Shown here one piece after another: positions 14,572-36,200 of a stretch of DNA of 64,000 bases. Made by a program: the position numbers and the translations under genes. Under the pieces are notes generated by a model that was given only the letters and a program-made list of their open reading frames with translations, made no database searches and was not told the origin of the DNA. Positions within the stretch are counted from its first letter, which is position 1; every line of letters begins with the position of its first letter. Source of the DNA: Orbicella franksi (taxonomy: Eukaryota); assembly GCA_964199315.1 (NCBI GenBank), contig OZ116709.1, positions 2,666,001 to 2,730,000 of the forward strand. Direction: 5' to 3'.

Positions 14572-17500
14572 GTGAGTAACACGTGACCTGAGTATCATTA
14601 ATGCATTTGATAATGTAACTTGCAGAGGCTAAGCTTGATCATGTATGATACAATTTCGTGAGTAAAATAGATAACAAATCTACAAGTCAATTTCTTGCTT
14701 TGTGAAGGCCTTCGTTGTCGGAGCCAAGTAACTGAGTTAATAAACGAAGCTTTAGGGTTTAACTTCCTAGTCAAGGAAACATATTAAAATAATTTTTTTA
14801 ATTTGATTATTTTTTTTCGCACTGTTTCAGCGTCTTTGAACTGTAACATTTAGTAATGCTCACTTTAAAAGACACCATTTTTACAGCGTAAAGCAAAACA
14901 ACAGGCTAACATTTGACTGGAGTTGCCACATCTTTCGAAACGCTAATATTTTTTTTCTTTTCTTCTACAGCCAAGCCAACAAAAGCACAAGGTAATAAAT
15001 ATGATTGATTCAGCATTAACATAAACCTTATTAAACGTGAAAGTGTGCTGAAATGCTTGTTACCTGTTATCTTACAACTTGCAAATAGTCAAAAAATTTG
15101 AAATAATGAGTAAGAGGAAATTTATTTATCTTAAGACAGAACATCGCATAGCTAACTTCAAAACCGGATTTAAAAACTGGAATCTCAAAAAGAAAGTGTA
15201 CATTCTTACCTTTTTTCCTCCTTTTTTCGCATTCTCTTTTCTCGTCAGCTTGTAGTGCAAAAATTGACCTAGCTTTATTGATCGATGGCTCTTCAAGTGT
15301 TGAAAGATACGGCGTCGGAAACTTCCGAAGGATTATCGACTTTGTCCGAGGTCTCACGATGGGCTTCGCAATCTCACGAAGAAACACGCGAGTGTCCTTG
15401 ATAGTCTACGGAACAAGACCGAAAATGATCTTCAATTTCCGCAGGTTAGTCCGGAGCAAAATTATTTCGTAGTGTATATTTTTGAATGAAGAGGGGCTTA
15501 GAACTAGCGGAAAGCAAAAAACTTTCAGCGCTTGTTTTTACTTCTCAGCAGAAACGTGGTCATTACGAAAAGCCCATATATTCCCAAAGAGGCCACAATC
15601 TCTGTCACCAGCGTAATAGGAACATGGACTTCGCATAATGAACCATTCACTTAGCGATTAACGTCTATCATTATATTGGGCTTGTTTTAAAACTATACCA
15701 CTGAAATAGGTACTTCGTCCATACCCACTCGGTCTCCAGTGTTAACGAAGTTTATTTGTGTTTGACTTGCTGCCTGGTTCTGGAAATCTAAATTAGCTGT
15801 AAGCCACATTCAACAAGCAGCTCTTAAACAATTAATTTTGAACATTTCAGATACCGGAGTAACACGCGGTTGTTCACTGGGCTCAATCGAGCCATTTACT
15901 ATCCTCGGACTGGTGCAAGAACAGGGCGCGCTCTTAGCTACGCTTATAGGAGGCTTTTCGTGAGAAGTCGACGCACCCGATCTAACAAAGTTGCGGTAGT
16001 TATCACTGATGGCCGCTCGCTTGATGACGTGCACACTATTTCCAAGCAACTGAGAGCCCGCGGAGTCACGATCTTCTCAGTAGGGGTGGGAAGGTACTTC
16101 AACGCAAGGGAACTTGATTCTATGGCAACTGATCCCGACAAGACTCATGTTTTCACGTCGGATTTTAAGCAGTTGCAGTACATCACCAACGATCTCAAGA
16201 AAGCAATATGCTTGAGTAAGTGTTCTGCCTGCAGAGATTCAGCTAAAGACTTCACACGTTTTTAGAACTTTTAGCTTGTGCTGTAACTTCTGAACTGTGT
16301 GCAGAAAAGCAAAGAAAATTTCATGGTCTGTGATGACTTCAACATTGTCACGTGAAAAAGTAGTTTTTGAGATATTTAGCTACTAAACTGCAAAGAGAAA
16401 ATTCGGTGCAGATTAAAAGGCTTCAGGCGCAGACATTTCTCTTCCAGGAAAATTATTTAGAAACAAAAGGATCACGATGACAACTAATTAGCAACATCAT
16501 TCTGTGGAAGCCTTAAATGTAAAGCCACTGATTAAGATGAGTAAGGATGCTGTCGTTACTGTTTTTGTTTTTTTTACATTGTTTCTTTTCAGGTGTGGGT
16601 GGCACTCTTTCAGTTTCTAAACTGCAGCCATGCGTGTGTGGACCAACCAAACCCGTGGGTCCAACAACTCCAGGTTTGTTCAACTAGTGTATTTCTTATT
16701 AAAGTATTCGATTTAAAAGTAGCCTCAGAAAGTGACATAATTTTCAAAAAATTCTTTGCAGTGTCAAAGACAACAAAGAAGCCCGGAGTTCCAGGAGGCC
16801 CTGGAAGCCCCGGTGGACCCGGAGGTCCGGGTGGTCCAGGAGGCCCCGGTGGACCAGGTGGCCCAGGAGGACCCGGGGGATCTCGCCCTGGTCAAATAAC
16901 AAAACCAACTAAAAATCCACCAGGTACGGAATAAATCATGTTAAAAAGTTTGAATTGCCTTAGTGTCCAGCTTTGGCAATACAGTTGTACTATCGACATG
17001 ACATCGAGCAATTTTTTGCTTCAAAAGGAAACCCCGGCGGTCCAGGAGGGCCGGGAGGTCCTGGTGGGCCAGGAGGTCCGAGTGGACCTGGGGGACCTGG
17101 TGGACCGGGTGGACCGGGAGGTCCAGGAGGTCCAGGTGGCCCGGGTGGACCCGGGGGACCAAAAACAACTCCTAAACCGGGAACAACAACAAAGCCCCCA
17201 GGCAAACCTGGAGGCCCCGGTGGTCCAGGAGGTCCAGGCGGTCCCGGTGGCCCGGGGGGACCAGGCGGACCAACAACCAAGAGGCCAGGTAAGCGTTAGA
17301 ACTAAACCTTTGAAGTAAAAGAGGTCTGGCCAGTTTAGTTACATTGGTCATGAGGTAAGTCCTTATGCATTGTACTATTAATAAACTGTTTTAGATATAT
17401 ATTAAAATTTTGTTTGGTAGCGAAACCTAGAGGACACAAACAAAGGAAATTGAATGAGCGTGTTTGTTCTTTTTTCTTGTTTGTTCCTCTAAGCCTCGCT

Positions 17501-20500
17501 ACTTAGCTGAACTCTAATAAGAGCGTTTAAACTTTTAACTTAAGTGGGCTCCCTTTTGAAATATTATTATCATTAGTAGTAGTATTATTATTATTACTAT
17601 TATTATTGGCCTATTTGCACAATACAGCGTGAAATTTACTACTTCAGTAGATGCTTAATTGTCACAGTTGAATGTCGCGCCTGTAGCTTATGAAGAGAAG
17701 AATTGTATTCACTCCACTCAACATTTTTTCTTGCAGGTAAATCTACACGACCTACGACACCAACTAAACATGCTCCGGGAACACCCGGTGGGCCTGGGGG
17801 ACCTGGTGGCCCCGGAGGACCCGGCGGCCCGGGTGGCCCTGGGGGTCCTGGAGGTCCAGGAGGCCCTGGTGGACCCGGTGGAAAGACCACACCTGTTCCA
17901 GGAAAAACTACCAAACCAACTAAACCCACAAAGAAACCAGGAACTCCCGGAGGTCCAAGTGGGCCAGGCGGTCCCGGTGGGCCAGGAGGACCCGGTGGTC
18001 CGGGAGGTCCGGGAGGTCCGGGTGGTCCGGGGGGACCGGGAGGGCCTTCGACACCTCGTCCTGGAAAAACGACAAAACCAACCAAGCCAACGAAGAAACC
18101 GGGTTCACCGGGTGGTCCGGGAGGTCCCAGTGGACCCGGTGGACCAGGGGGCCCAGGAGGACCAGGCGGTCCTGGAGGTCCCGGAGGACCGGGGGGACCA
18201 GGAGGACCTGGAGGACCGGGTGGTCCAGGAGGACCCGGGGGTCCGGGAGGCCCCACGACAAAACCTTCAAGAGCGCCAACCAAGAAGACCAAGCCAACCA
18301 AAAACCCGCCTGGTAAGCCGGGTGGACCCGGTGGACCAAATGGTCCTGGAGGACCTGGAGGACCCGGTGGTCCGGGCGGCCCAGGAGGTCCCGGGGGACC
18401 AGGAGGACCTGGAGGTAACGTATCAGAACACTTTACATTTGCTTAACATCCTGGATTTCCTTGTCAATGGTATTTGACGCTTTTTCTTGATTTATCCAAT
18501 TTCTCTATGCAATTTTCTCGTTTTCTTTCTTCTACCCACCTTGCGTACGGAGGCTGCGCCCGCAATACGAGTGGCAGTCAAAACTAAGCTGTCCTATTGA
18601 AACGACACTCTAATAGTCTTCTTCCTGGAAGCTAACAAAAATAAAGGCAATGCTTAAGTTGTTTTAGCCTCTTCTAATAATTAACTTGAGAATTCCGGAT
18701 TTAATTTGACGGGGCATGCGATGTGTGGCATCACATTTTGCTAGTTCTCGTTGTTGCTGTTTTGCCATTTGGATACGACTTAGACATATTTTGACTGAAT
18801 TAAGCATCAGCACCATTGTGGGAGGCGACGTGGCCGAATGGTTTGCCCGCCGAACTCCGGATCGGGTCCGGGTTCGAGCCCTGGCGGGAGCCATCAGGTT
18901 GTGTTCTTGAGTACGACACTGAACTCTCACAGTGCCTCTTTCTACCCAGGTGTGTAAATGGGTACCAACGAACATGCTGGGGGGTGACCCCCTGAGTGTG
19001 CTAGCTCCGGGGGTAGTAAAACACTGCTAGTCACTTCATGCTACTGAAACAAGGAAAAGCTCAGGCGATATGGACCACTTGGCCTGACGTCGACTTTACC
19101 TTACGCTGTAATAGTTTTCGAGTCGGAAGATTTCCCCACGAACGATCCTGGGTTATCGACTGAGTTCAGCTAAGTTAACACCCTCCGTGTCCCCGTTAAA
19201 TAATAAAAAGGGATTCCTAATGCTGTCGTTTTTGTACACAAAAATAAGGACGGCCTTTGTCTGTAAAAAATATTGAATTACGTTTGAATTCTTTGACACG
19301 TAAAATTACGCGACAGTGGAAACCCACATGAACAGAACTTCCTGTAACGAGAGAAGCGTTGTTATAATGTTTCAGGACCCGGAGGTCCGGGTGGCCCAGG
19401 AGGTCCCGGTGGTCCTTACGGTCCTACAACAAAGAAGCCAGGTACACCAGGAGGGCCCGGGGGCCCTGGAGGGCCAGGAGGGCCCGGTGGACCCACAACC
19501 AAGCGTCCCGGAAAACCAGGTGGGCCCGGAAAACCGGGTGGTCCTGGAGGACCCGGAGGACCCGGTGGTCCGGGGGGCCCAGGAGGTCCCGGGGGACCAG
19601 GCGGTCCAAATGGTCCTAAAACAACAACACCAAGACCAGGTGTACCGACGAAAAAACCGACAACAAGAAAACCGGGAACCCCAGGGGGACCAGGAGGCCC
19701 CGACGGCCCCGGTGGACCCGGTGGTCCGGGAGGACCAGGTACGTCATGTCTCTCCCAGCAATGTTGTTTAGACACGTTTCCACCTGTTATCAGCTCGATT
19801 ATTTTTTAGAAATTTAGGGAAAAGGAGATCGTATAAACTAGGCAATTGGGAAGTACCTTAAAGACCAAATTTCTCCTTAACAAACAAAGTACATTTCAAG
19901 CACAATACATCTTTACTCATAACCTCAAAAATAACAAAATGTAGTTCCTAAACAGGCAGTAAATTATTATGAGTGCATTTGCTTACCCATGTTCAATGTT
20001 CTTTTTTCAAATAAGGCTATTGTCACATCTCTAGGGTTTGTTTAAACTAAACTTACGTTTCTGATAGAACCTTTGGATAGAATTGTTTGTACAATAACAG
20101 GCTGACGTTTCACGGCCTTTGTCTGCAGAGAAAATGGCACTCAGAGGTCAACTTGCGTTGACCTCTGTTTAGTCCAGGAGCCTGTTTTAATCCTCGGAAC
20201 ACAAAGTAATGTTCATATAGAAAATTTTAAGATTCAAGAAATACTAAAGTTGTTGTACATTAGGCTGATTACCGATCTTTGAACTATTTATCAGCAGTAC
20301 TTGCTTTCTTTTGATAATTGTATATTTAATATCTACAAGAAGATAAACAACCAGTATAACGTAATCATGGCTTAGATTTCGTAATTTAATTTCTACAGAC
20401 ACGTTCTTAAGATTGTATAAAGCTTTCATCTTGTCACACTTTAAATTACTGTTCGTCCATATAGCATTTTGGGGGTGCTCCTAATGCTGAAAAATGGACA

Positions 20501-21224
20501 TTCTTAACAAGCGTATTCTTAGATTCATACGTAAGGACTATAACTCGCCCTATGGTAATTTACTGGATAAAATTAACAAGCGCATTCTTAGATTCATACT
20601 TAAGGACAGTAATTCGCCTTATGGTAATTTACTGGATAAAATTAATTCAAAACCTCTGTACATTAGACGCCTTCAAAAGTTTTTAGTTATACTATAGCTA
20701 TCCAAGATATTTAAGTAATATGTTTGCTCTGCACTCAACAACCTACAGTTTACGCGGTAATTATATTGTCTCTTCCTGATGCGAAAACAACAACTTACGG
20801 CCTGCATTCCTTTTCATATTTAGCTGCTAAATTACGAAACTTTTCCGGATTCGCTTTGAACTTCTACTTTTGCGGACTTTAACTCTTTTCCGTAGCATTG
20901 CAACTTGTCCCTAATTTTATTATGTACATAGTTCAGCTCATTCATAATTTTTAGCATATTTATTGTATAAGTATTGCATTTTGTTATATTTATGTTCTCG
21001 AAGATATTAGCTAATTTTAGCTACTTAAAAATTCGAGAGGAAACAAAGTATATGATGATGATGGTGTCATGTCGACAAGTTGTGAGTTATTTAAACAATA
21101 GCCTCCATTTGGCGCGAAAATATGCTCGGATATGGGTATTTGTCCGCGCACATTATCTGTTCCGAGAAGCGAACAGTTTTCCGAGAGCATAACTCCAGGA
21201 AAACTGTGAGCTTCCAGGGACGGA

Positions 21225-21258
<34 letters not shown>

Positions 21259-24200
21259 CTGCCAACTGGAGGCTATTGTGTTTATTATCCTTCACATATT
21301 TGTCGCAACACGCGCGGTTTTGAAATTGAGGAATATCCTCGGATATTCCCCAGTTTCACCTGGGGAATATTCGGTCACGTGACGTGCTTAGACCAATCGC
21401 GCGAACGAAAATATTTGATGGATTATCAACGTTATTGTCATTTCATTTCTGTACATCAGGGGGACCAAACGGTCCGGGGGGTCCAGGTGGACCGGGCGGA
21501 CCTACGACTGCAAAGCCGGGTGTACCAACCAAACCAACAACTCCAACAAAACGTCGACCACCATACCCAGGAGGACCTGGAGGACCCGGCGGGCCCGGAG
21601 GCCCAGGTGGCCCTGGGGGTCCAGGAGGACCCGGTGGACCCGGTGGACCCAAAACTCCTAAGCCTGGTGTACCAACTAAACCAACCAAGCCAACAAAGCG
21701 ACCAGGCAGACCAGGAGGCCCAGGAGGTCCGGGAGGTCCTGGAGGACCTGCAGGTCCCGGAGGGTCCGGTGGGCCCGGTGGTCCGGGCGGGCCTGGAGGT
21801 CCAGGTGGACCAGGAGGGCCAGGTGTGGTTCATATTTGTTTTAAAATTTGTTGAGAACTGTGGAAAGTTAACTTCAGTTCATGAGCTGGGAGTCCTACAC
21901 ATGACTCCGAGATAATTACAATAGAGTTTGTCAAAGTCGAAGACATGTGCTATTCTTGCGACAGTGTTTCTGATTGTTTATAATGAACATAATGGTTTTA
22001 CTGTCCTAGCGAGACTTACCGCTAACAAGTACATTAGCCTTGCAACATAATGCGATGTGAGGGAATACGGCTCGTTCAACATGTGCACCCAACAACAGAA
22101 ACCCAGTGATTTCATATCATTAATATAATGTCTGTTTTTCACTCTTAACTCGGAGTTTGTACCAGGAAAAATGACTCTGAGAAAGTTAAGAAACGTAATA
22201 GGAATTTGCTTCACTTAATTTATTCTTGCATCAAGGCCAGGGGTGACAGCACTTGAGGCAATACTCTATAATCAGTTAGGGCTTTGATGTGGGGTTGAGG
22301 GGATTGCACGGTAACCGGCATTTGGAGCTTGAGAATGGCAGAGCGACTGTTGATTCATTTATTTAAGGTGGACCTGGCGGACCACCAGCGGGGCAACCAA
22401 CATCGCCAGTGACAGAGAAACCGGGTAAGCCAGGAGGTCCGGCAGGTCCCGGTGGACCTGGCGGACCCGGCGGCCCGGGGGGACCAGGAGGACCAGGAGG
22501 ACCGACTGGACCAACCACGCCGACTAAACACGCTGGGAAACCCGGAGGACCTGGGGGACCGGGAGGACCTGGCGGGCCGGGAGGTCCAGGTGGACCAACA
22601 ACTGGACTACCAGGAAAACCAGGGGGACCAGGTGGACCCGGTGGACCGGGAGGACCGGGAGGACCTGGCGGGCCGGGAGGACCGACAACAAAAACACCAG
22701 GCACTCCAGGTAAGAAAGGAATGAGAAAGATCTGATAATCATGTGGGTGACAAAAGACGTCAAAGGCATACATTATGGCATGCAAGAACAAGAGGTCTCT
22801 GAGACCGTGGGAGTGAAGAGTATTAGGAATAACCCTTCAGTTCAGGCAGTTGTTGCATGACCCATACCAGAAAAAAAAGTTCGAAAATGATCCTGAAATC
22901 TACCCAAAAAGATTTTTTAAAAATGCTGTCTCTAAACTTTAGTTCGCTGTGTGTTGCACTCTGGATTCAATGGTCAGAGTTCGCGTCTCGGCCGTTTAAG
23001 ATAATTATCTTGTCTTTACTCTTTTAGTATTGTTAAGCTATTAACACAAACTTACGATTTGCTAGGTAGCTTCACGCTACGATTTTTGTGTTATATTGGC
23101 TCAGAAAAGGCCACACTTTATCTGCAGAAAGTATTCATAGGAATGTTCATTATTTAGGCGGCCCCGGAGGTCCGGGGGGTCCGGGAGGGCCTGGAGGACC
23201 GGGAGGTCCAGGAGGTCCAGGAGGACCCGGTGGTCCCACCACAAAAAAACCGGGATCACCAGGAGGTCCCGGTGGCCCGGGAGGACCTACTACAAAACCA
23301 CCACCCGGTAAACCGGGTGGCCCAGGAGGACCTGGGGGACCAGGAGGCCCCGGAGGCCCTGGAGGACCCGGCGGACCTGGAGGGCCTGGAGGTCCGACTA
23401 CAAAAAGACCAAAACCAGGAAGAACTACACCCACGACGAAGCCAACTAAAAAGCCTGGACGACCAGGAGGTCCGGGGGGACCTGGAGGTCCAGGGGGACC
23501 CGGAGGTCCAGGAGGCCCAGGTGGCCCAGGAGGACCGGGTGGACCAGGAGGACCAGGTGGGCCCAAGACAACAAAACGACCTCCAGGGAAACCAACCAAA
23601 CCTACCAAGACTCCAGGATCACCGGGAGGGCCAGGAGGTCCCGGAGGGCCCGGAGGACCTGGTGGGCCGGGAGGACCCGGTGGCCCCGGTGGACCTGGAG
23701 GACCAAAGACAAAACCTCCCGGTACTATTACAAAACCGACCAAGTATGCGCCTGGAAATCCCGGCGGGCCTGGAGGTCCGGGCGGACCGGGAGGGCCAGG
23801 CGGGCCAGGAGGACCTGGTGGACCAGGAGGGCCAGCTAAGACTACTCCTAAAACACCCAAGACACCAAAACCAGGTTAGAAAGAATAATAAGGCATTATA
23901 GCCGAGAAATGTGTCAAAATACTAACTGTAAATTTTTCATTATTCTTTCCCCTCTGCCTTGATGGTAATTCAAGTAATGTGACTGCATCTGCATTTTATC
24001 ACATAGAACAGATTTAAGTTGAGTGTGGAAAGTAACTCACATTTGCTTTGGTTTGTGTGCCACTGTCTACGTGAATGTTTTATAAAAATCTCGTTTTTTT
24101 TATTTGGCTTATACAAATCTTACGTTGTCATCCAGTCAGAAGTAAAACCAAAACCAAACGTATCTCTCTCACACGTTTCCCAGTGGTTCAAGTCAACTAC

Positions 24201-27200
24201 ATATGTTTGCTTAGAGTTTCATTGGCTCAGTTGATTACCGTGTCTTTGTGATTGGCCAGAATACATGATTAATTTGGTTTTACCCTTAAGATATTTCTAA
24301 CGAGTGTTTTTACTTGTCTTCGAAATACAAACGTTTTTAAACTGACACGTTTTGGCAAACAAAGTCATACCGTTTAAATGAAAATACTTTTTTTCCAAAT
24401 GTTCCGGATAATCTTAACAAACTAACCTAATTTTTAAGCGAAAGCAGTCGACACTGGTCGATGACCGCAAACTGAAAAAGTATTCCCATGCATGGCCAAT
24501 TTTGTTCCAAAGGAAACGACGAAAATAATCTTTTCTGCGTCTCAGAATGAGAACTCACCTGATATGATAAGTCACGTGCAAAGACTTGTAGTCACGTGCA
24601 TTTACGCGGTAGGCTCTGTATAGTTTCCAGAAAACCTAGAAAAACATCAATTGGCAGCACTCAGCGCAAACTTCCTCAAGTAGCTATAATAGACTCAAAA
24701 TAGTTTTGCTCTGTATTTGGGGATCTGAGAAAACATTTCTCGGGTATTTTATAACAAAATTACATAATTTCACAAAATTTCACAAATTAACTAAAAAAGT
24801 TGTTTATCAATACAAGTAGAAAAGAACAATTATTCTACATACAGAAACACAGAAACTAACACAGCCGGGCAGGTAAAAATTAAACTAACTATTGTCAGGA
24901 GCCCGATATAGCCTCTAGTATTGCTGATGTGTGATTTTCTCTCTCAGGGAAACCAGGCGGACCCGGAGGACCAACAACAAAGCGACCAGGAAAACCCGGC
25001 AGTCCAGGAGGACCCGGAGGACCCGGAGGACCCGGTGGTCCAGGTGGACCCGGAGGTCCAGGTGGGCCGGGAGGTCCGGGAGGACCCGGAGGTCCAGGCG
25101 GTCCAACCAAGAAACCAGGAAAACCCGGGAAACCAGGCAAAACTACTACTAAACCCCCAGGAACACCCGGTGGTCCAGGTGGGCCTGGGGGACCCGGAGG
25201 TCCAGGAGGCCCCGGAGGTCCAGGAGGTCCCGGCGGATCCGGTGGGCCAGGGGGACCAAATGGCCCTACAACTGCTCCCCCAGGAAAACCAGGGGGACCC
25301 GGTGGTCCTGGAGGCCCTGGAGGTCCTGGAGGTCCTGGTGGTCCCGGAGGTCCCAAAACATCTCCACCCGGTAAGCCGGGTGGTCCAGGAGGACCCGGTG
25401 GACCTGGTGGGCCCGGAGGTCCCGGCGGACCTGGCGGACCCGGAGGGCCGGGATGTGTTATGCGCCCAGGAGTGCCAGGAGCAACCACAACACCGAAAAG
25501 TGGTCCGACAAAACCTGGAGCTGTCACACCAACAACTGGAAAACCGTGCGTCACGATTCCACCAGGTAATCTAATGCTCAATAGTCTGTTCCTTTACCAA
25601 GTGCTGTCATTACAGATTTCAACAAAGCTTGGTCAGATCTTGTATCCTTTTGTCCTGTAAAACTGAACTTAATTTAACCGCATTTAATAGATTCTATTGT
25701 AATAAGGCACTTTCTTTATGATTAAGGTTTTACCGTTGTACGGAAACCAACAACTGTCCCCACGAAGCCAGTCGGACCATCAGGTCCCACTACAAACCCC
25801 GCTGCTACAACATCACCCAGTAAAGGTATGTGACGCGATAAGCACTTTTAAGTGTTCTAACACTTTTTTTTGTTTTAGATAACTAACATTACATGTGGCT
25901 GACCCCTGAAATTGCTGTTTGTTAAGTTCCTACCAACGTAACAGTTGCACGTTTAACTATAATGGCAACTCGGTTACCGACTTTGAGAATAAACGTACTA
26001 AAAATTATCTGCGACAATAGCGATGAATTATACATGATGTGTATTATAGTTCTAGAGAAATGCACTCAGGATGTGTGACCGCACGACCCGCCTAGATTAG
26101 CTCAGCTACCCGCGGGCATGTTATAATTGTTATAATAAAATGTATGTATGTATATATGTTCTCCAACTGTTGGGTTTATACGTAGTGCATGCGTGGAAAT
26201 TACGTTTGTTCTTGAGATTTTTGAAGGTCGGATAATGTATGTCACTATCTGGTATGCATGTATTTAAACATTCTGTAAATAAAGATCTCTTCTTCTATAC
26301 CCAAGGTAACATATGGTTAAAAGTAACTTTCCGTGATCTGGGGGTAAGGCCCTGGTCAAACGTCGAACTTCACTTGAGACGAACTAAACATGATAAGTTC
26401 TACGTTTGACTCAACTAAGTTCGTTGACTGAATTTAGATCGACTTGCACGTTCTATCCGTCTGAAGTTTAAATCGACTCAAATTGCAATTTGGTTCGTCT
26501 CATGGGAAGTCTGACGTTTCTACCTGGGCCTAAACTTTTTTTTCGCAGCGGGATAGAAGTTGAGTCTTTCTACGTTTTGCCGAGGCGATGGTCTTTCACC
26601 TGCTGCACGTACTATAATAAGCCTACAATAACCCTTTGACAATGTTATTCTTTTATACAGTGTGCAAAGCAAAGGTGGATATTGCTTTCGTGATCGACAT
26701 CGCCGGTGGTGTCAAAAGAAATTTCAACAGTATTAAGAAATTCTTCTTAGAACTGGTGGATTCCTTCACCATCTCTAGTCAAGATGTCCGGATTGGTTTA
26801 GTTGTAAACTCGTACAGTCCAGGAGTGAAGTTAAGCTTTGGTCAGTACAACAGCCCCAGAAAGATAAAAAGCGTTATTCAACTGTTACAACCAGTTGGTG
26901 GAGCTAGGAAGACTGGAAAGGCATTAGAACTTGCACTAAAACGCCTCTTTATTGCCAGCAAGGGCAAGAAAACGTTAATACTCCTTACCGTGGGGAAGTC
27001 TTTAGACAAAGTGCTTGGTCCAGTACAACAGCTCGTTGCTATGGGAGTGAATATCTTCAGTATTGGCGTGATGCCCGGTGCTATTCGCAGTGAAGTCCTT
27101 ACCATAGCTAAAGATCCACAACACGCGTACGAGACCAACTTTAGAAGTCTGGGGAATATTGTGAAACGAGTGAAGGACAAGGCATGCGCAGGTATGTTTT

Positions 27201-30200
27201 AAGATCTACAATAGCTGTGTGTTTAACGGAAAAATTAGGCCTATAGTCAATATTCTTTACTTCGACATGAAATGCTTTTATTGAACATTCTAGTTTAATT
27301 AGCATAGGTCGTCGTATGAATGCCAGTGCAATTAGCTGTTTACACTACGAGTGATATCTGAAAATTAAGGAAGTGCAATTTGAACGAATTTTCAAATATC
27401 ATGAGTAGTATCTTAATTGCTCGAGTTTTCATACCATTAATCATTTATTTGATGACTGAGAAAATTATGAAAACGCGCGCGTTAATTTGCACTAAATTAA
27501 CAATAAATTAGCCCGCTTTCAGCCAGTCACGGTGAAGTAATTTTCTCGGTCATATAATAAATAACAATAACAGTATTACTCTCCCTGTATTGTTTCTAGA
27601 CTTAATACAGTGTACAATAAAACCGATAACATAAAGATATATTCCAAAGAACTTAAGATTTAAAAGCTAAAAATTTTCAGAAAACATCAGCAGTACTTGA
27701 TTGTAAAATTGATTTTTATCAGGTTCCGAAAGCATTAAACTGGGTGAAGATCTGACTTTACATCTAACTAACTCATTTCTTTTACTCGCTCTTAACACAG
27801 AGGCAGGAGGCAGTCCACAGAGACCGAAAAAGCCTACTACCAGATCAAGTGAGTAATCACTTAATGTCATTTATTACAAGCTACTGCAGGTCTCGAAATC
27901 AACTTTACTTACTTAACAGACTGGTTATTAATTCAGCATGATCAAGTTATAAAGACCATGACATCTCAGGAAAAATAAATGAGACGCACAAATTTTTGAC
28001 GCCGCATTTCCTTACGTTTTTAAATCCCCTGACCCTGAAAACTTTACCTTCACCAACTGATCATTTTAACTACATTCCATTTCTAATCACAAATGTGTCT
28101 GTTTTCTAACCAGAGCCTCCAAAGGCTGTTGCTATTTTCCCACTCAACAAAAAGACTCGCGGAAAAGACATTGGTCCATTGGGGAATAGCCCAGGAATTC
28201 TGTACAATGTTCGACCCACTCCGGGCCCGAACGGCCAACCTGGTGGAGCTATAAAGTTCCCAAAATACAGGACTGGATACGTGGAGTTTCCTAACAGCGG
28301 GAAACTGGACACCAAGAATTCCATAACCGTGACAGTCTGGGTCAAGCCTGACGGACCAGGAACGATCTTCGAGTACAAGCCAAGAGGAGTGACATTTGGC
28401 ATTCGTTCGCCGGATACTCTGTATGTTCGTTTTATACGCCGAAACGGACGACCAACCAAAACTGTCAAAACAAGGCGGCGAGGAGTAATTCTTCGAAAAT
28501 GGAACTACATCGCGGTCACTTATGATCAGCGGACGGGCACTGGGACCATCTGGCGGAATTCTCGCCCCATTGCCTTCCAGAAACTCGGTTGGATCAGACT
28601 TGCGACGAAGAATCCGTTCAGACTGGGCGGGGCCACTCGCACTCGGCTTCCTTTCCGAGGCAGTATGACGTGTCTTCAGATTTACAGCGATGCTTTGACT
28701 GGGCCACAAATAAAGAACGTACAGAATGTTTGCATCAGACCAGGTAATAATCTTCATGTCTTTCAAGAATTCTTGACAGAGAGTCTCATTCAATCGGCAA
28801 TCCCAGAGTCTGGACAATAGCGTCTGAATCTATAATTCACAAGACCGTTAGATGTTCGTTGCTTGTAGGATTGTATCACATGATACCAGTAGTGACAGGC
28901 TGAAGATCTTGAACTCTAAATGCAAAACCATCTTCCAGTTGAAAGGCCTACACCGAATCTGCCAATGTTCAGGTGTTTCTGCTTAATTAACCAGATTCGG
29001 TTGGACTTTCAATAACATCTTACGAAATGGTTTACAAAAAAAAAAATTGATTTGACTGTCTCATTCGTAGAGAAATATCCCAATGTAATAACCTTTTACT
29101 GATCGGACATGGTTCTTTTATTCTCAGGTCAACCTACTCCCACACGTCCTCCTACGGCTCCTGCTCCAGGTAAGAAAAAAGTACCTAGCAGTTCCTTGGA
29201 ATAGATGTGTTTTACCTCCAAAATGTATTTATATTTTGCATATATTCCGTTTTTGTTAAACTTTTAGCTAGATACACGACCCCACAAGCAAACCTATTGC
29301 TTTAAACCAAATCGAGTTTGAAATAAAGGATTGTTGTTATGGTTGTTGTTGTTAATTGAGCCTGTTTAAAGAAAAGCTACTTGTCAGTGCCGTCGAAAAT
29401 GTTGCCGTCAGACCCCGCTTTTGAAGGGTAGAATAAATCTCAACTGCATCCTTAACGTAAGCTGCGGTCAGATTTCCTCAGACTTAAACATCAATACAGC
29501 ACATTGGCGTACATGGCTTAAACTCAGAGCTTTGGCTATATTAATACTACTCCTCTTTGCACACAATGTATGGAAATGTTTTGAAAAGAAGATAACAAAC
29601 GCAAAAAGGCAAAAACTCACTGCTTAGTATTTGGCATTTCTAATACACTCATTGATGGACCAGGGTAAGATTAACTGGGTGAGGGTGTTTTTGATCTAAA
29701 TCAGCTTCTTCCTGCCATATTTTTTCAGCATTACCACCTGCAATGGCATTCTTCCCGCTAACATCCAAATATGGTCCCCGAGACGTAAGTCCATCAAGAA
29801 ACCTTCCTGGGAAAATCGTAGGTGCATTGCCTACCCGAGGACCCGACGGCCAACCAGGAGGTGCTTTCAAGTTCCGAGGTCGTGCCGACAGCTACATCGA
29901 GTTTCCGAACAACGGCCGACTGGATACGAAGGATTCTATGACGATTCTTGCGTATGTTAATCCCGAATCGGCTGGACCCATCTTTAACTACAACCCAAAG
30001 GGGTTTGGAATGCATTTCTGGATGGTTCGACCGAATGTGTTATTTGCTCGCTTTGTGAAAAGGTCCAAAAAGTTCACAAGACCTGTAGCTACCAACAGAG
30101 TCAAGCCACGAACATGGAATTGGGTTGCAGCTTCATACGATAAGAACACTGGATACGCAAGGTTATACGTGGATTCAAGAATATCAGCTGAAAGGAACCT

Positions 30201-33200
30201 TGGCAGAATAAAACTTGCTACTAACTATCCTGTGAGAATGGGCGCGCGCATTAGAGATAGGAGATTTTTCCGCGGGAAAATCACATGTTTACAGTTGTTC
30301 AACGTGGCTCTGACAAGTCGACAAATCCGTGCTGCGAGAAAGAACTGTTTTAAGTCAGGTTGGTCAAGTTCGAAATGGAATTATTTACTTTAAGCACGGT
30401 AATATATTATGAATGCTAATTACAAGAGAGTTTTACAGCTTATCATGACAGTGGGCATGTTTGAAACGTTGCGTGAATTCTTGCTTTTCCAGCTTAACAG
30501 GTTTTGGTATCCAGTCACATCTTAAGCCTCCACAGCTCTCACTATGGATGAAAAAAATACAAGTGTTTCACAGAATGTTTTGTTTCACATTCCTTTTATT
30601 TCAAATGGGTAAAAAGTTCGTTAAACAATTTTACTTCGCGTAAACTTCAAACGAAAAAGTTTGGATATTCTTTATTAGTATATTCTCAGCTCCGACTATT
30701 GCATTTCTAGCTCTCTGATTGGCTCAAAAACTCCGACTATGAGCCATTAGTCGGAGTTTTACCTTATATGGAAAACAGTGCGCCAAGTTTAAAAATTTTC
30801 CGCTCTGTAAAATTGTTGAAATAAAAATCGGCGGCAAAAACCCGATTAAGAATATACTAAAACAATTATTCCATTCGACCTTGTTGGATATGAAGTGATC
30901 ATAACCAACTCGCGCTACGCGCTCGTTGGTTATTTATCACTTCATATCCAACGCGGTTTCATGGAATAATTGTTAAATAGAAAATACGCGACTGCAACTC
31001 TTGTTCCTTCTCATATGAAAATTGCTGCTTTATCTGTTTTAGGAAGAATCACACCAACCAAGCCAGTGCCGGTAATTACGAAACCCACCCCCGGTAAGTC
31101 TTTTGTCCTGTGCGCTTATTGCTTGTTCAAATATATAGAATACACTACATCCAATATCAAAACAATATTCGCATTGCGCTAGAATGTGCAAGTCTAAGCT
31201 TTCAAGATAGAATGATTTCATCTTTAATAAAGTGATCGAAAACGTTTTTTTTTCCATTTCGAACAGCTATTCGCAACTTGGTGGCTGTGTACCCACTAGA
31301 CGCCACTAACGGTGCACGTGACCTCAGCCCTACCAAAAACCTCCCAGGAAAACTTTCGGGAGTAAGTATCGTCCCAGGCCCCGACAGGCAGCCGGACACT
31401 GCGTTGCGGTTCTCTGGTAGTCCTGTCAGTTACATCGAGTTTCCAAACAATGGGAGACTGGACACCAGACGCTCTATCACCTGCTCGGTGTGGGTTTTTA
31501 ACGAAGGGAGGGGAGGCACTGTATTCCAGTACAACCCCAACGGACAAGGAGTTGGGTTGAAGATTATCGGAGCCAATCAAATTGAAGCGCGCATTGTCAG
31601 TCGAAGAGGAGCTAAAAATATCCCAGTGAGAACTCTAAAGAAGGCCTTCAAGCCCAGAACTTGGACATACATTGGTTTCAGTTATGATTACACATTAGGT
31701 ATTGTGAAAATTTATGTCAATGACAAGCTAGTCATAACAAGAGTCATTGGTCGAATGGAGCTTCTTACGAACAGACCAGCGCGAGCAGGATCAACAAGGC
31801 GTGGAAGGAGATTCTTCCGCGGTCGCATGTCCTGTATACAGATTTACAGCAGAGCTTTGAGTGATTATGAGATCAGCACAGTCAAGACAAGGTGCTTCAA
31901 AGGAGGTATGATGCTTGGAACAGTTGTCAATCACACTCGTGTTGTAGTCTTACCTCTCCAGTGTAGTTAATATGTTGTGAGTTAATTTCTTAGCCTTAGT
32001 TATAGCACATTTCGCGTTTTGGTTGTAAAAATAGACCTGACATGAAAGACTTTTACATTCATAGGTTTGAAACAAAGACAATTTGAAATGAAAAAGTTCA
32101 TGTTGACATTGAAATCTCATGTTGTTCAGTTTAAAGCAGCGCAATTTGCATCAGAGTGCGAAATGTCCTATTCTTTCTCGATGTTTGAACGAAGGTCGGT
32201 ATCTCTCTTTCTTCCTATACGGAAAGTTCAACAGAACAGCTCCTTAGTAAAATCGACATCAGTCAAGCATCTCCATTTGTTAATAGACAGGAAATCGTCT
32301 TAGTCTCACGGGTTCTTATAGAATATTTACAGTTGTTAGCAAAAAACAGCCTACGAGTACATGAAGTTATAAAAGTGGATCGAAGTAAAGGATAAAAGTG
32401 GAATGAATAGCTGAAAAATATCATTGCCGCTAATTTTGACGTTACAAGTACAACTTTTTCTTTTTTCTAGCCGAAGGAAAACCACCGAGCAAACCTTCGA
32501 CAGGTAAGGAGCAAGATTATTATCATTTTGTCGTTGCTTTCTGCATAATATTTAGCTAAGTTATGCGTTCCTAGTTTTTTTAGCTGCCCCGACGCCGGTG
32601 GCAACCTACCCGCTCAGCGGAGTACTCGGAAGACGTGACATCTCGCCAAATAAAAACCCGCGAGCCAGACTGCGAAATGTGAAGCCAGGTAACGGACCCG
32701 ATGGTCTTCCTTCAGGCGCCATAAAGCTCAATGGTAGCCCTAACAGCTATGTTTTGTTTCCAAACAATGGAAAACTCGACACTGTGGGCGAAATAACGAT
32801 CACAGTGTGGGTGAAGCCGAAAAGCGCTGGACCAATCTTTCATTATAAGCCTCGGACATGGGGAGGGGTGCATGTCTGGGTGGTGGGACGGCCAGGCCAA
32901 CGAAAGTTTTTCGTCAGATTCTCCGCGCGGTCTGGGAAGACTGTGCGAGCAATAAGGAGCAGCCATGTTAAGATGGGACGGTGGAATTACCTGGCGGTTA
33001 CTTATGACAAAAAGAAGGGAGTTGGAACCATCTGGAGAAATGGCATCCCTGTGGCTCAGGTACTCATGAAACATAGCAATTATAGACATATTTCCCCCTC
33101 TATAACACGATTTAACTCAGTTCAAATAAGAAGTCTCGTATGTAAGCTTACTGATTCAGAGCAAGAGAATATCGCACGGTCAGCAGAACCTAAAAAACAA

Positions 33201-36200
33201 GCCGTTTCAAAACTTGTTGAATTTGATAAAAGGAAACTCCTTGTCTTTCGCTGGTCAACTTGAACAAGGTTAGTAAGCACAAAGTATAAGTACCGATAAC
33301 AAATATGTTAATTGTTTATTCAAATAGCGGAGTGTCGGGATTTATAAACTCGCAACTAACTATCCCGCTGTCATGGGACGCAAGCCAGGTGACCGACGGA
33401 TCTTCAAGGGAAGTATTTCTTGCTTGCAAATCTTCAACAAAGCCTTGATCGGATCACAGATCCGAGTACAGAAGAGAAAATGCTTCAGACGAAGTAAGGA
33501 TTGTTTCGTTACCCTTTTCTGACAACAAAAAAACACATAGACAAACGGAGAGACAGTCCGACAGACAGACAGAGAGACAGACAGACAAAAACAGAATGAC
33601 ACAGTTAGGTCTAACAAGAGAAATCAAACAGACAGTCAGCCGGATAGGTAGATGGAAAAACCAACAAACAGTTCTAACACGTTACTTTGTAACAAAGCAA
33701 TAATCCTCAATCCGGTCCATCAATTTACTAAGACTAGTTCTCCCTGTCCCCAGGGGAACACTAGAAAGCTGCAGACAAATGTCTCTACGACACTCACGAA
33801 GCACTCTCCTTTCCCTTCTACACCTCATTTTATGGTATTTTTCGTGAGTATAACTACTTAAGTCAGTACATAACAACTGTAACGTTCTTACTTTCTCTTC
33901 GTAGAACCAAACCCGAAACCTCCAAAACCCAAACCAGGTACGTTTTTGTATAATATGCAACATTGAAATTACTCGATAATAACTTGTTAGTACGTTAGGA
34001 TATTTTTTCTAAGGACCTTTGAACCCAGTTCTGATTTTTTCTCCATAGCCGGTGGACCCTTCACCATATACTTTTGCTCCTATTTCACAGCTCAGCCAAT
34101 GCTCATGGGACTTTACCCGTTTGATCCAATCAGTAAGGGCCGAGATAGAAGCCCTAATAAGGCGCCTAAAGCTGTGTTCAATAACGTGCGCTTGACGCGA
34201 GGGCCGGATGGCCGACCAAACGCTGCGGTCTATCTACTTGGCAGTCCAAACAGCTACGTTGAAATTCCGAATAACAGCAAGTTACGTACATCAAACGCGA
34301 TCTCCATGTTTGCTTGGATCAAGCCCAAAGGAGGTAGTTCTGGTCCCATTATTAACTACAACAGAGGACCTGCCTGGGAGACTCATCTGTGGGTCACAGC
34401 CCCCAAAACGCTGTTTGTTCGTTACGTGAAGGTTGGCGGTATCGCTACTTCTTCATTGTCCAAAGCAAAGCTGAGACAAAATGTTTGGAACTTTGTCGGC
34501 TCAACGTATGATGGAACTTATGCCACGCTGTGGGTGAATGCCAAAAAAGTGGCTTCGCGCAAAATCGGAAGTATTAAATTGTCGACAAGTGGACCGATTA
34601 GGATCGGAGCTAAGGTCGGCGATCCTCGTTATTTTAAAGGAGCTGTCGCGTGTGTGCAACTTTATCGCGTGGCTTTACAGAAGAAGCAAGTGATAAGGGC
34701 AATGAAAAGATGTCTCAGACGTGAGTATTTCTTTAAATGACTGAAATGAAGTCAAGTTTAGAAATAAAGTAGACTGTTAGTAGGAATGAATTTCCTTGTT
34801 CGCAATTCCAAAAACCGGAATTGGCCGGCACCCTCCCGATTGCTGCATTTGATTTAAAGAGACTTTCCTTGCATACGGCTGGCGCGCCTCAAATTTAAAT
34901 TGACCAATTACGTACTGTCCTGACGTCAATATATGTTAACAGGAAAGGCATTGCATTCACGGTCAGGCGACGGCATTGAATATCAGTTCACGAAAAAGTG
35001 AAAACGCGGCATGAAACGTTTTGCGTCTCCAAGCTTTTAAAATGGGTCACCCGTGTACGGCGTTTCGTTCGTAGTTGAGTGTCGTCAGGTTGGATAATAG
35101 CTGTGTTATTTTCAACAAAATATGTTATTCCTCGTCAAATTAAACTCAGAAAAGAGGCCAAAGCAACTTGTCTTTATTTCTTTCAGCTGCGAAGACTAGT
35201 CCTTTCGTTTCGGTAGGACAGCTTGGTTTTGACTGCCGTTCGTACGGTGGACGCATTCGCCTTATGCAAAGCCTTTAACGTAACACCTTTTAAATTGCTG
35301 ATCAATTTTTATTCTCTATTCAGGTCGTCCAGCTGTTACTCCTCGTCCCACTCTCCGGCCGCCTCCACCAACTCAGGCTCCTGCATGTAAGTAGAAAACG
35401 AGGTGTCCCTTCCTTTCTTGCTCAAAAAGAACCAGTAACCCGTAGGGTTGACTGTCTGCGTTAAGCCCACAAAGTAATGTTTGTCATCGATCACCTAGCC
35501 ATTGAACTTGTATTGCGATAAGATAGGTTAACTGACATGATGCTACAAGATGAAAAATGTAAAACAAACGAGGTCAACCGATTGGATGACTATAATCTAT
35601 ACGAAAATTTTAATACTGAGTGAGCAGCCTGGATAGGTGGACGTGATTCTGCTGTTTCAGAATTGATTAATCCAGTTAACGTATACCGTCACGTGGGTGT
35701 AATTTTAGTTAAAAACAATTATAGAACACTGAGGCACATGTGTTGCCCGGCTAGCTCAGTCGGTAGAGCATGAGACTCTTAATCTCAGGGTCGTGGGTTC
35801 GAGCCCAACGTTGCGCGCACAAGTTTTTACTTGAATTGAATGAGAAATTTTGTCGTTCTCCTTTTGATTATGTCAAGATCAGCGAGAAATAACTCAGTTT
35901 TTTATCACTTCATTCTTATCTAGTTTTATTTCGTTATTTTATCAAGTGCCTTCTACACCCGTGGTTCTGTATCCATTAAACAAGCGATATAGAGGAATCG
36001 AAAAACTGGGAAGGAATCCCCCCGCCATTCTCAGCAGAGTACGACTTGTGCCTGGGCCCGACAAACGACCCGGAAGTGCATACGAATTGAAAGGAAAACC
36101 CGACAGCTACATTAAGATCCGGAACAGAGGTCGGCTGGATACTAGTAAAGCCATGACAGTCCTTATATGGGCATTACCAAAAAACCGCATGGGACCCATC

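What the first reader, a model, noticed from the sequence alone, without database searches (positions are those of the whole stretch)
16762..25565. About 1,170 aa of (Gly-Gly-Pro)n blocks: neither collagen nor classical silk
Seen: roughly 25-30 blocks of near-perfect GGP, mostly about 5-12 triplets, separated by Lys/Thr/Pro linkers such as [12 protein letters not shown]. Gly and Pro codons are heavily mixed (GGA/GGT/GGC/GGG, CCA/CCT/CCC/CCG), so the repeat is held at protein level and is not a DNA satellite. Known: poly(Pro-Gly-Gly) adopts polyproline-II/polyglycine-II-type helices, and GPGG motifs underlie flagelliform silk elasticity. Inference: an elastomeric or PGII-bundle fibre, with Thr for O-glycosylation and Lys for cross-linking.
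Basis: partly seen in the sequence, partly recalled or inferred. Interest (0 to 1): 0.75.

Follow-up and report, generated by a model that had tools for sequence, protein, structure and literature searches.

The report
Coral Gly-Gly-Pro rod domain, misannotated antisense
Reef corals carry a strongly conserved 1,168-residue stretch of Gly-Gly-Pro blocks and Thr/Lys/Pro linkers between two collagen-VI-type VWA domains of a giant matrix protein, and public annotations read it on the wrong strand as a collagen.

Summary
Eight + strand exons (16762-25565), all phase 1-1, total 3,504 nt or 1,168 aa. Composition is G 45%, P 31%, T 9%, K 8%, with about 226 GGP triplets in about 33 blocks. Codons are scrambled.

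The array lies in phase between two VWA domains and upstream of nine Laminin_G_3 exons. The same array sits at the orthologous locus in Orbicella faveolata, Porites evermanni and at least five other coral assemblies. dN/dS is 0.05-0.07 at dS 0.7-1.0. All exon indels are multiples of 3, and AG/GT sites are conserved.

The antisense frame reads (PPG)n and hits Pfam Collagen at 1e-30, while the sense frame hits nothing. NCBI and the Porites annotation call minus-strand genes here. Four independent tests favour the + strand.

New points:
- Pro recurs every third residue through the linkers too.
- Within blocks the Gly before Pro is nearly invariant, while the Gly after Pro takes S/A/K/N/R. Formally this is (Gly-Pro-Yaa)n. 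It argues against a Pro-Gly beta-turn silk or elastin model.
- The domain has net charge +105.

The fold is unresolved between collagen-like trimer, polyglycine-II (PGII) sheet and free polyproline-II (PPII) tether. AlphaFold2 gave no compact fold. I rate it a new variant of a known kind.

The parts
15249..15444 (+). First exon of the upstream VWA domain (reads ...[12 protein letters not shown]..., metal-ion-dependent adhesion site (MIDAS)-type motif)
   Evidence: Translation and sequence. It joins 15851 in frame.
15851..16215 (+). Second exon of the upstream VWA domain. It ends in phase 1.
   Evidence: Pfam VWA at 2.4e-21, profile positions 57-173. Donor TTGA|gtaagt.
16593..16673 (+). 27-codon exon carrying the conserved LQPCxCGPTKP motif directly before the array. 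Phase 1-1.
   Evidence: Sequence. The motif is conserved in L001, L003, L004, L006 and L009-L013.
16762..16923 (+). GGP exon 1 (54 codons)
   Evidence: AG/GT conserved in L003.
17028..17288 (+). GGP exon 2 (87 codons)
17737..18414 (+). GGP exon 3 (226 codons)
19376..19738 (+). GGP exon 4 (121 codons)
21460..21822 (+). GGP exon 5 (121 codons)
22368..22709 (+). GGP exon 6 (114 codons)
23158..23874 (+). GGP exon 7 (239 codons)
   Evidence: 92-94% amino-acid identity to the L003 and L005 orthologues.
24948..25565 (+). GGP exon 8 (206 codons). It ends with a two-Cys tail (GCVMRP...KPCVTIPP).
25727..25825 (+). 33-codon Thr/Pro linker exon. Phase 1-1.
   Evidence: Sequence. Conserved tail ...TTSPSKG in the orthologues.
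26661..27191 (+). Downstream VWA domain in one exon. Phase 1-1.
   Evidence: Pfam VWA at 2.3e-27. The nearest solved relatives are collagen VI alpha-3 and mussel PTMP1. This exon served as the anchor for finding orthologues.
28114..40655 (+). Nine Laminin_G_3 exons with phase-1 splice candidates. They probably belong to the same gene.
   Evidence: The same order is seen in L001-L006.

Best explanation
The region is the sense-strand coding array of a giant coral matrix protein that appears to be secreted. The order is signal peptide, acidic block, VWA, CxC exon, this array, VWA, nine Laminin_G_3 domains, then more VWA domains. The array encodes about 1,170 residues with Pro at every third position throughout. 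Bare Gly-Gly-Pro blocks of 3-13 triplets alternate with Thr/Lys-x-Pro linkers. Such a sequence should form an extended polyproline-II-type chain with a contour of about 0.36 um at 3.1 A per residue. It is polycationic (net +105) and almost free of hydrophobic residues. My proposed mechanism is a long tether between the VWA adhesion modules. The side-chain-free Gly blocks act as backbone hydrogen-bonding 'stickers' that pair with the same blocks on other chains, in a collagen-like or polyglycine-II-like way. The Thr/Lys/Pro linkers act as charged, probably O-glycosylated spacers and hinges. Shown here: the exons, strand, phase, conservation, periodicity, charge, substitution asymmetry and domain context. 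Inferred: the PPII conformation, interchain pairing, glycosylation and secretion.
For: Exon set and phase continuity with both VWA exons. The orthologous array is present in O. faveolata (L014), P. evermanni (L001) and five further coral assemblies (L002-L006), always between the CxC exon or VWA and the Laminin_G_3 exons. Exon identity is 0.79-0.85 against 0.52-0.66 for introns. All exon indels are multiples of 3, and AG/GT is conserved at 16 of 16 boundaries in L003. dN/dS is 0.074 and 0.051 at dS 0.70 and 0.99. Strand tests: AAN codons end in a pyrimidine 8 times in 97 against 42% at four-fold sites, p = 2e-13, and conservation drops sharply at the + strand boundaries. Linker dN/dS is lower in the + frame. 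Codon-usage fit is +120.7 bits for the + frame and -13.1 bits for the minus frame. Pro-to-Pro spacing of exactly 3 occurs 96 times in and around linkers, against 32 +/- 5 in shuffles (0 of 2,000 reach it). Net charge is +105, pI 12.0, hydrophobic residues 1.6%. Within blocks the Gly before Pro and the Pro itself are nearly invariant. The Gly after Pro is replaced in only about 3% of aligned triplets at dS near 1, so every position is constrained, as expected of a packed repeat. (Pro-Gly-Gly)n is reported to form PPII helices that assemble through their Gly faces. Gly-only tracts can take part in a clamped triple helix (PMC13673506).
Against: NCBI models only the VWA exon on this strand, as a 186-aa single-exon protein. 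That suggests no spliced RNA support was available to that pipeline. AlphaFold2 on exon 7 gave pLDDT 52 and pTM 0.13 with no secondary structure, which fits disorder as well as it fits an oligomer-dependent fold. Blocks of 13 triplets or fewer with Gly in a non-core position are expected to be weak helix formers (my knowledge of host-guest peptide data, not tested here). Linkers do not preserve the triplet register between blocks.
Confidence: 0.5

Rival explanations
1. A true but atypical collagen. Three chains, nucleated by the C-terminal VWA and/or stapled by the N-terminal CxC motif, form short (Gly-Pro-Gly)n triple helices interrupted by non-helical linkers. This would make it a derived member of the VWA-COL-VWA collagens (types VI and XXVIII).
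For: Gly falls at every third residue inside all 32 runs. Within-block replacements spare the Gly before Pro (1 case) and hit the other Gly (45 cases) with S, A, K, N, R and M, which are typical of collagen Y positions. VWA domains lie on both sides, and their nearest solved relatives are collagen VI chains. The CxC exon is conserved. COL28 is a VWA-collagen with many imperfections (PMC10013395).
Against: The sense sequence does not match Pfam Collagen even at E<=10. The 'Y-position' Gly is itself replaced in only about 3% of triplets at dS near 1, which a triple helix does not require. Runs are 3-14 triplets long, and linkers of 3-38 residues break the register. Linkers keep Pro, not Gly, at every third position. 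No trimerisation domain was identified.
Confidence: 0.2
2. A purely non-associating, intrinsically disordered, glycosylated cationic spacer or entropic spring, similar to lubricin or titin PEVK. Under this reading the Gly blocks only provide flexibility and length.
For: P plus G is 76%, far above the composition line that separates elastomeric from amyloid-forming sequences (PMC5424786). The AlphaFold2 model has low confidence and no fold. The language-model look-alikes are mucin-like viral glycoprotein G fragments. Linkers are T/K/P-rich.
Against: Residue-by-residue conservation is much tighter than expected for a spacer. dN/dS is 0.05-0.07 with scrambled codons. Block lengths are mostly retained, with only 2.8% of exon columns gapped against L003. 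The constraint is asymmetric between the two Gly positions.
Confidence: 0.22
3. The gene is on the minus strand and encodes a (Gly-Pro-Pro)n collagen with hydrophobic F/V/L/G interruptions. This is how NCBI (O. faveolata) and the P. evermanni annotation model it.
For: The minus frame of exon 3 hits Pfam Collagen at 1.3e-30. A 1,312-aa minus-strand gene is called over L014:194-9123, and minus-strand genes are called in L001.
Against: The Lys-codon wobble test gives p = 2e-13. 82 of those 97 wobble bases would sit in four-fold minus-frame codons and should then be free to vary. Codon-usage fit differs by about 134 bits in favour of the + frame. Linker dN/dS is lower in the + frame. Canonical + strand splice sites sit exactly where conservation drops and are conserved across species. 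All exons are in phase with the flanking + strand VWA exons. The minus model starts [12 protein letters not shown], with no signal peptide. The minus frame stays open automatically because the sense sequence lacks Tyr, His and Gln codons.
Confidence: 0.04
4. A flagelliform-silk-like or elastin-like beta-turn or beta-spiral elastomer built on Pro-Gly turns. This is part of the first reader's inference.
For: High Gly and Pro content. The GPGG string occurs throughout.
Against: The period is 3, not 5. The residue after Pro is the tolerant position (45 of 51 within-block replacements), so the Pro-Gly turn core is not what is conserved. Hydrophobic residues are 1.6%.
Confidence: 0.04

Closest known systems
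Collagens VI and XXVIII (VWA - collagenous domain - VWA)
   Same: A Gly-periodic, Pro-rich domain is flanked on both sides by VWA domains. The VWA domain is closest to collagen VI alpha-3 and alpha-1 among solved structures. COL28 also has many imperfections in its collagenous domain. Cys residues lie at the domain edges.
   Different: The non-Gly, non-Pro position is itself about 95% Gly. Runs are only 3-14 triplets. Linkers are long, mucin-like and break the register. There is no Pfam Collagen match in the sense frame. The array is 1,168 aa, against 336 and 528 aa, and is followed by nine Laminin_G_3 domains.
Synthetic poly(Pro-Gly-Gly) and natural glycine-rich PPII-bundle domains (snow-flea antifreeze protein, ALK glycine-rich domain)
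   Same: The blocks have the same sequence as the polymer. That polymer is reported to form PPII helices packed in double-layered sheets, with Pro outside and Gly inside.
   Different: The natural bundles are compact, with short turns between helices of equal length. Here the blocks are unequal, the linkers are 3-38 residues, and AlphaFold2 finds no bundle. Bulky or charged residues are tolerated at one Gly position.
Mucin-like or lubricin-type Pro/Thr/Lys-rich domains
   Same: The linkers are P 28%, T 22%, K 18%. The nearest language-model neighbours are mucin-like viral G glycoproteins.
   Different: Only about 40% of the domain is linker. Pro keeps a strict three-residue period. Glycosylation was not tested.
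Flagelliform spidroin GPGGX and elastin VPGVG elastomers
   Same: Very high Gly plus Pro content, above the elastomer composition threshold.
   Different: The repeat is a tripeptide, not a pentapeptide. The Pro-Gly pair is not the invariant unit. The domain has almost no hydrophobic residues and is polycationic.
[quoted passage not shown]
   Same: The blocks are polymers of this motif (PMC3831164), so they are predicted to be good substrates for Vibrio or clostridial collagenases.
   Different: This is a resemblance of sequence only. Cleavage was not tested.

Membership tests
Collagen triple-helix repeat (Pfam PF01391) | Gly at every third residue over long uninterrupted stretches | tested here: inconclusive
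   This holds only locally. There are 32 runs of 3-14 triplets covering 816 of 1,168 residues. Linkers break the register.
Collagen triple-helix repeat (Pfam PF01391) | Match to the family profile | tested here: not met
   No hit for three sense exons even at E<=10. The antisense frame scores 1.3e-30. HMMER's composition filters may contribute to the sense-frame miss.
Collagen triple-helix repeat (Pfam PF01391) | One Gly per triplet under much stronger constraint than the other two positions | tested here: inconclusive
   The asymmetry is clear: 1 replacement against 45 across seven species, and 3 against 16 in pairwise differences. However, the 'free' Gly and the Pro are also highly conserved.
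Collagen triple-helix repeat (Pfam PF01391) | Trimer formation and hydroxyproline | not testable with these tools
   Needs expression, circular dichroism (CD), SEC-MALS and mass spectrometry.
VWA-collagens (types VI and XXVIII) | VWA domains on both sides of the collagenous domain, with VWA domains of collagen VI type | tested here: met
   Pfam VWA on both flanks, in phase. The best PDB relatives are collagen VI alpha-3 and alpha-1.
VWA-collagens (types VI and XXVIII) | Conventional Gly-X-Y domain with varied X and Y residues | tested here: not met
   X and Y are Pro and Gly in about 95% of triplets. For contrast, a conventional coral VWA-collagen (L007) has a varied GXY domain.
Glycine-rich PPII-helix bundle domains | Compact bundle of equal-length PPII helices joined by short turns | tested here: not met
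   Blocks are 2-13 triplets and linkers 3-38 residues. The AlphaFold2 model has pLDDT 52 and pTM 0.13.
Glycine-rich PPII-helix bundle domains | Tripeptide periodicity with Gly on the packing faces | tested here: met
   The blocks are (GGP)n. Whether intermolecular sheets form cannot be tested here.
Beta-turn elastomers (flagelliform silk, elastin) | Pentapeptide repeat with an invariant Pro-Gly turn and hydrophobic residues | tested here: not met
   The period is 3. Replacements fall on the residue after Pro. Hydrophobic residues are 1.6%.
Mucin-like PTS domains | Pro/Thr/Ser-rich sequence carrying dense O-glycans | tested here: inconclusive
   The composition is met in the linkers. Glycosylation cannot be tested here.

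The most novel reading that the evidence does not exclude
The Gly-Gly-Pro blocks form intermolecular polyglycine-II-type sheets or bundles in vivo. That would make this protein a natural poly(Pro-Gly-Gly) fibre or gel. It would be a third kind of Gly-rich PPII-based extracellular assembly, alongside the collagen triple helix and the compact PPII-bundle domains. Its roughly 32 sticky blocks per chain would be gated by cationic, glycosylated spacers.
Probability: 0.2. Interest if true: 0.85.

Novelty: new variant of a known kind. Interest (0 to 1): 0.62.

Why it matters
If translated as read here, this is a long natural polymer of the (Pro-Gly-Gly) model sequence and of the classical collagenase substrate motif. 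It has been kept residue-for-residue in both Orbicella and Porites, which I recall (not tested here) belong to the two major lineages of reef-building corals. It gives a concrete natural system for asking what a Gly-Gly-Pro chain does: marginal triple helix, PGII sheet or free PPII tether. It is also a candidate load-bearing or tethering component of coral extracellular matrix. There is a practical point too. Profile searches do not see the sense frame, while the antisense frame imitates collagen, so current coral annotations appear to model this locus on the wrong strand and split the gene. Similar cases could be hidden in other genomes.

Tried and rejected
1. Word-indexed and exhaustive HMMER searches with GGP exons returned only weak low-complexity hits, with at most 3 consecutive GGP triplets. 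Among them were a GMC oxidoreductase fusion and a bacterial mucin-binding protein. GGP-exon ORFs that were called as genes on database-source contigs, such as L002 4509-5243, did not appear among the hits.
2. The ESM Atlas returned mucin-like viral G fragments at scores of 0.68 or below. This is a lead only.
4. I looked for cDNA-derived contigs. All VWA-exon ORFs in the database carry intron-derived ends. A degenerate-pattern scan of JGI metagenomes for the CxC exon gave five contigs, all genomic.
5. AlphaFold2 on exon 7 with two orthologues gave no confident structure.
6. The literature held no paper with GGPGGPGGP in a coral or matrix context, and a search for GGP-repeat or Gly-Gly-Pro phrases found nothing relevant.
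7. I started an exact reconstruction of NCBI's minus-strand exon model and abandoned it as combinatorially large. The strand was decided by other tests instead.
8. A distant VWA hit (P0196, L007) turned out to be a conventional VWA-collagen with no GGP array. P0195 sits on a 1.2-kb contig, which is too short to judge.
9. CpG decay was considered as the cause of the G1/G2 asymmetry and rejected. The boundary C frequency is 29% against 11%, which allows at most about 2.6-fold bias. The 11 Ala replacements cannot arise that way.


Full report
**Observation**

A six-frame scan finds eight + strand open segments rich in GGP between 16.5 and 25.7 kb and none elsewhere in the window. Each segment is bounded by a polypyrimidine-AG acceptor and a G|GT donor, and every boundary is in phase 1. 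The exons are 16762-16923, 17028-17288, 17737-18414, 19376-19738, 21460-21822, 22368-22709, 23158-23874 and 24948-25565. Together they make 3,504 nt, or 1,168 codons.

The spliced peptide is G 44.9%, P 31.1%, T 9.3% and K 7.6%. It has 33 perfect (GGP)n blocks (n = 2-13), or 32 G-x-P runs of 3-13 triplets, separated by T/K/P linkers. Fifty-four of the 64 possible synonymous GGN-GGN-CCN units are used, and the longest exact DNA repeat is 29 nt.

**Gene context**

- A VWA domain lies upstream in two exons, 15249-15444 and 15851-16215.
- A 27-codon exon (16593-16673) reads ...[11 protein letters not shown]... and comes directly before the array.
- After exon 8 come a 33-codon Thr/Pro exon (25727-25825) and a one-exon VWA domain (26661-27191).
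- All of these junctions are phase 1, so the array is in frame with both VWA domains.
- Nine Laminin_G_3 exons (28.1-40.7 kb) and two more VWA exons follow, each with phase-1 splice candidates.
- An exon at 11.96 kb begins with a signal-peptide-like sequence. This is my own reading and was not tested with a predictor.
- The downstream VWA is most similar, among solved structures, to collagen VI alpha-3 and alpha-1 and to the mussel byssus matrix protein PTMP1.

**Relatives**

HMMER-based searches with the GGP exons were uninformative. GGP-exon ORFs that were called as genes on database-source contigs (for example L002 4509-5243) were not among the hits.

I therefore used the adjacent VWA exon as an anchor. 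It finds a graded series of exon-level ORFs at 99% down to 58% identity. One of them is XP_020622326.1, 'collagen alpha-1(XII) chain-like' from Orbicella faveolata. Another is an unnamed Porites evermanni protein. The O. faveolata assembly is 98% identical to the window over 14 kb, so the window is Orbicella or a very close relative.

I fetched 10 kb on each side of the anchor in seven assemblies: L001 (Porites), L002-L006 (unnamed coral holobiont assemblies) and L014 (O. faveolata). All of them show the same GGP exon array upstream and Laminin_G_3 exons downstream. The LQPCxC exon is also conserved. From my own recollection, not tested here, Orbicella is a robust-clade and Porites a complex-clade coral. 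If so, the array predates the split of the two main lineages of modern stony corals. A 31%-identical VWA hit (L007) is a conventional VWA-collagen with a varied GXY domain and no GGP. I could not search beyond Scleractinia.

**Selection**

- Against L003 and L005, exons are 79-85% identical, while introns are 52-66% identical and heavily gapped.
- Every exon indel is a multiple of three.
- AG/GT is conserved at all 16 boundaries in L003.
- dN/dS is 0.074 (dS 0.70) against L003 and 0.051 (dS 0.99) against L005.
- Exon 7 is 92-94% identical at the protein level, with almost all block lengths retained.
- Identity drops within 20 nt of the + strand splice sites.

These are coding exons under strong purifying selection.

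**Strand**

The strand needed care. The antisense frame reads (PPG)n with F/V/L/G linkers and hits Pfam Collagen at 1.3e-30. The sense frame hits nothing even at E<=10. NCBI models a 1,312-aa minus-strand gene across the array in O. faveolata, and the Porites annotation also places minus-strand genes there.

The wobble positions of the two frames coincide, and the sense sequence has almost no Tyr, His or Gln codons. The antisense frame is therefore open as a by-product. Four tests favour the + strand:

1. AAN codons end in a pyrimidine only 8 times in 97, against 42% at four-fold sites (p = 2e-13). In the minus frame, 82 of those 97 bases would be unconstrained wobble positions.
2. Synonymous codon usage fits the local Pfam-supported exons in the + frame (+120.7 bits) but not in the minus frame (-13.1 bits).
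3. Linker dN/dS is lower in the + frame: 0.16-0.26 against 0.26-0.42.
4. Canonical + strand splice sites are conserved and in phase with the flanking + strand VWA exons.

In addition, the NCBI minus model begins [12 protein letters not shown], which is not a signal peptide. I put the antisense reading at about 4%.

**What the sequence says about structure**

- *Pro periodicity.* Pro recurs every third residue in the linkers as well as the blocks. Ninety-six Pro-to-next-Pro spacings that involve linker residues equal exactly 3, against 32 +/- 5 in shuffled linkers (0 of 2,000 reach the observed value). Linkers are largely (T/K)-x-P triplets. The invariant periodic residue of the whole domain is therefore Pro, with 63 register changes over 363 prolines. 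This points to an extended PPII-type chain with a contour of about 0.36 um at 3.1 A per residue (figure).
- *Substitution asymmetry.* Within blocks, single replacements across seven species fall 45 times on the Gly after Pro, once on the Gly before Pro, and 5 times on Pro. Pairwise species differences give 16, 3 and 3 out of 559 triplets. Formally the unit is Gly-Pro-Yaa. The replacements (S, A, K, N, R, M) are residues I recall as favoured in collagen Y positions. This argues against a Pro-Gly beta-turn elastomer. CpG decay cannot explain the bias.
- *Constraint on the 'free' Gly.* This Gly is still replaced in only about 3% of triplets at dS near 1. A triple helix does not require that, whereas a two-face Gly packing such as the (Pro-Gly-Gly)n sheets would.
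- *Charge and hydrophobicity.* The domain has net charge +105, pI 12 and 1.6% hydrophobic residues. That excludes elastin-like hydrophobic coacervation and suggests binding to polyanions.

AlphaFold2 on exon 7 gave no confident fold.

**Mechanism**

I propose a long, extended, cationic tether between VWA adhesion modules. The bare Gly-Gly-Pro blocks would be multivalent backbone hydrogen-bonding contacts between chains, in a collagen-like or PGII-like way. The T/K/P linkers would be charged and probably glycosylated spacers. My confidence in this mechanism is about 0.5. My confidence that these are sense-strand coding exons is about 0.95.

Rivals:
- a bona fide but atypical VWA-collagen trimer (0.2);
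- a non-associating disordered spacer (0.22);
- the antisense collagen reading (0.04);
- a beta-turn elastomer (0.04).

The blocks are also polymers of the standard bacterial collagenase substrate motif, so susceptibility to Vibrio collagenases is a testable prediction.

**Limits**

- NCBI's single-exon VWA model suggests that spliced RNA support was lacking in that annotation run.
- The taxonomic range beyond stony corals, the oligomer state and the modifications are all open.

Noticed in passing
L014:194-9123 (O. faveolata MZGG01001743.1) and L001:1-7276 (P. evermanni), equivalent to window 16.9-25.8 kb: Public annotations model the array on the minus strand: a 1,312-aa gene in O. faveolata and three fragments in Porites. 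They model the adjacent VWA exon as a separate 182-186-aa protein (XP_020622326.1, CAH3178371.1). My strand tests indicate these minus-strand models are artefacts of the collagen-like antisense frame.
   Followed up: yes
window 17739-18413, 23160-23873, 24950-25564 (+): Pfam, phmmer and the word-indexed search return nothing meaningful for the sense GGP exons. GGP-exon ORFs called as genes on database-source contigs were not among the hits. This may be a blind spot for this kind of low-complexity coding sequence.
   Followed up: partly
L010:353-1306 and L013:1443-3028 (metagenome contigs OFHR01006734.1, OFFA01005724.1): Two short contigs from a related coral carry the CxC exon and exon 1, followed by a hybrid exon. 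The hybrid joins the start of exon 2 to the end of exon 3 or exon 7. This is either short-read assembly collapse through the repeat or deletion alleles.
   Followed up: no
window 21017-21400, in the intron between GGP exons 4 and 5: Two overlapping ORF-like stretches on opposite strands encode similar peptides (...[18 protein letters not shown]...). This indicates a palindromic or inverted repeat, possibly a transposon remnant.
   Followed up: no
L007:7811-13449: A conventional coral VWA-VWA-VWA-collagen gene with a varied Gly-X-Y domain. Its VWA is 31% identical to the window's. It is a useful contrast to the GGP array.
   Followed up: partly
window 28114-40655: Nine consecutive Laminin_G_3 exons of about 210-240 codons, one domain per exon. 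Each has phase-1 acceptor and donor candidates, which fits one giant modular gene running on from the VWA at 26661-27191.
   Followed up: partly
window 44626-50345 and 51152-52204: Repeated Arg-rich modules of about 110-130 aa with no Pfam match (one was tested), and a 351-aa Arg/Lys-rich ORF. With the +105 charge of the GGP domain, much of this locus encodes very basic sequence. The exon at 11.9-13.2 kb is acidic.
   Followed up: no
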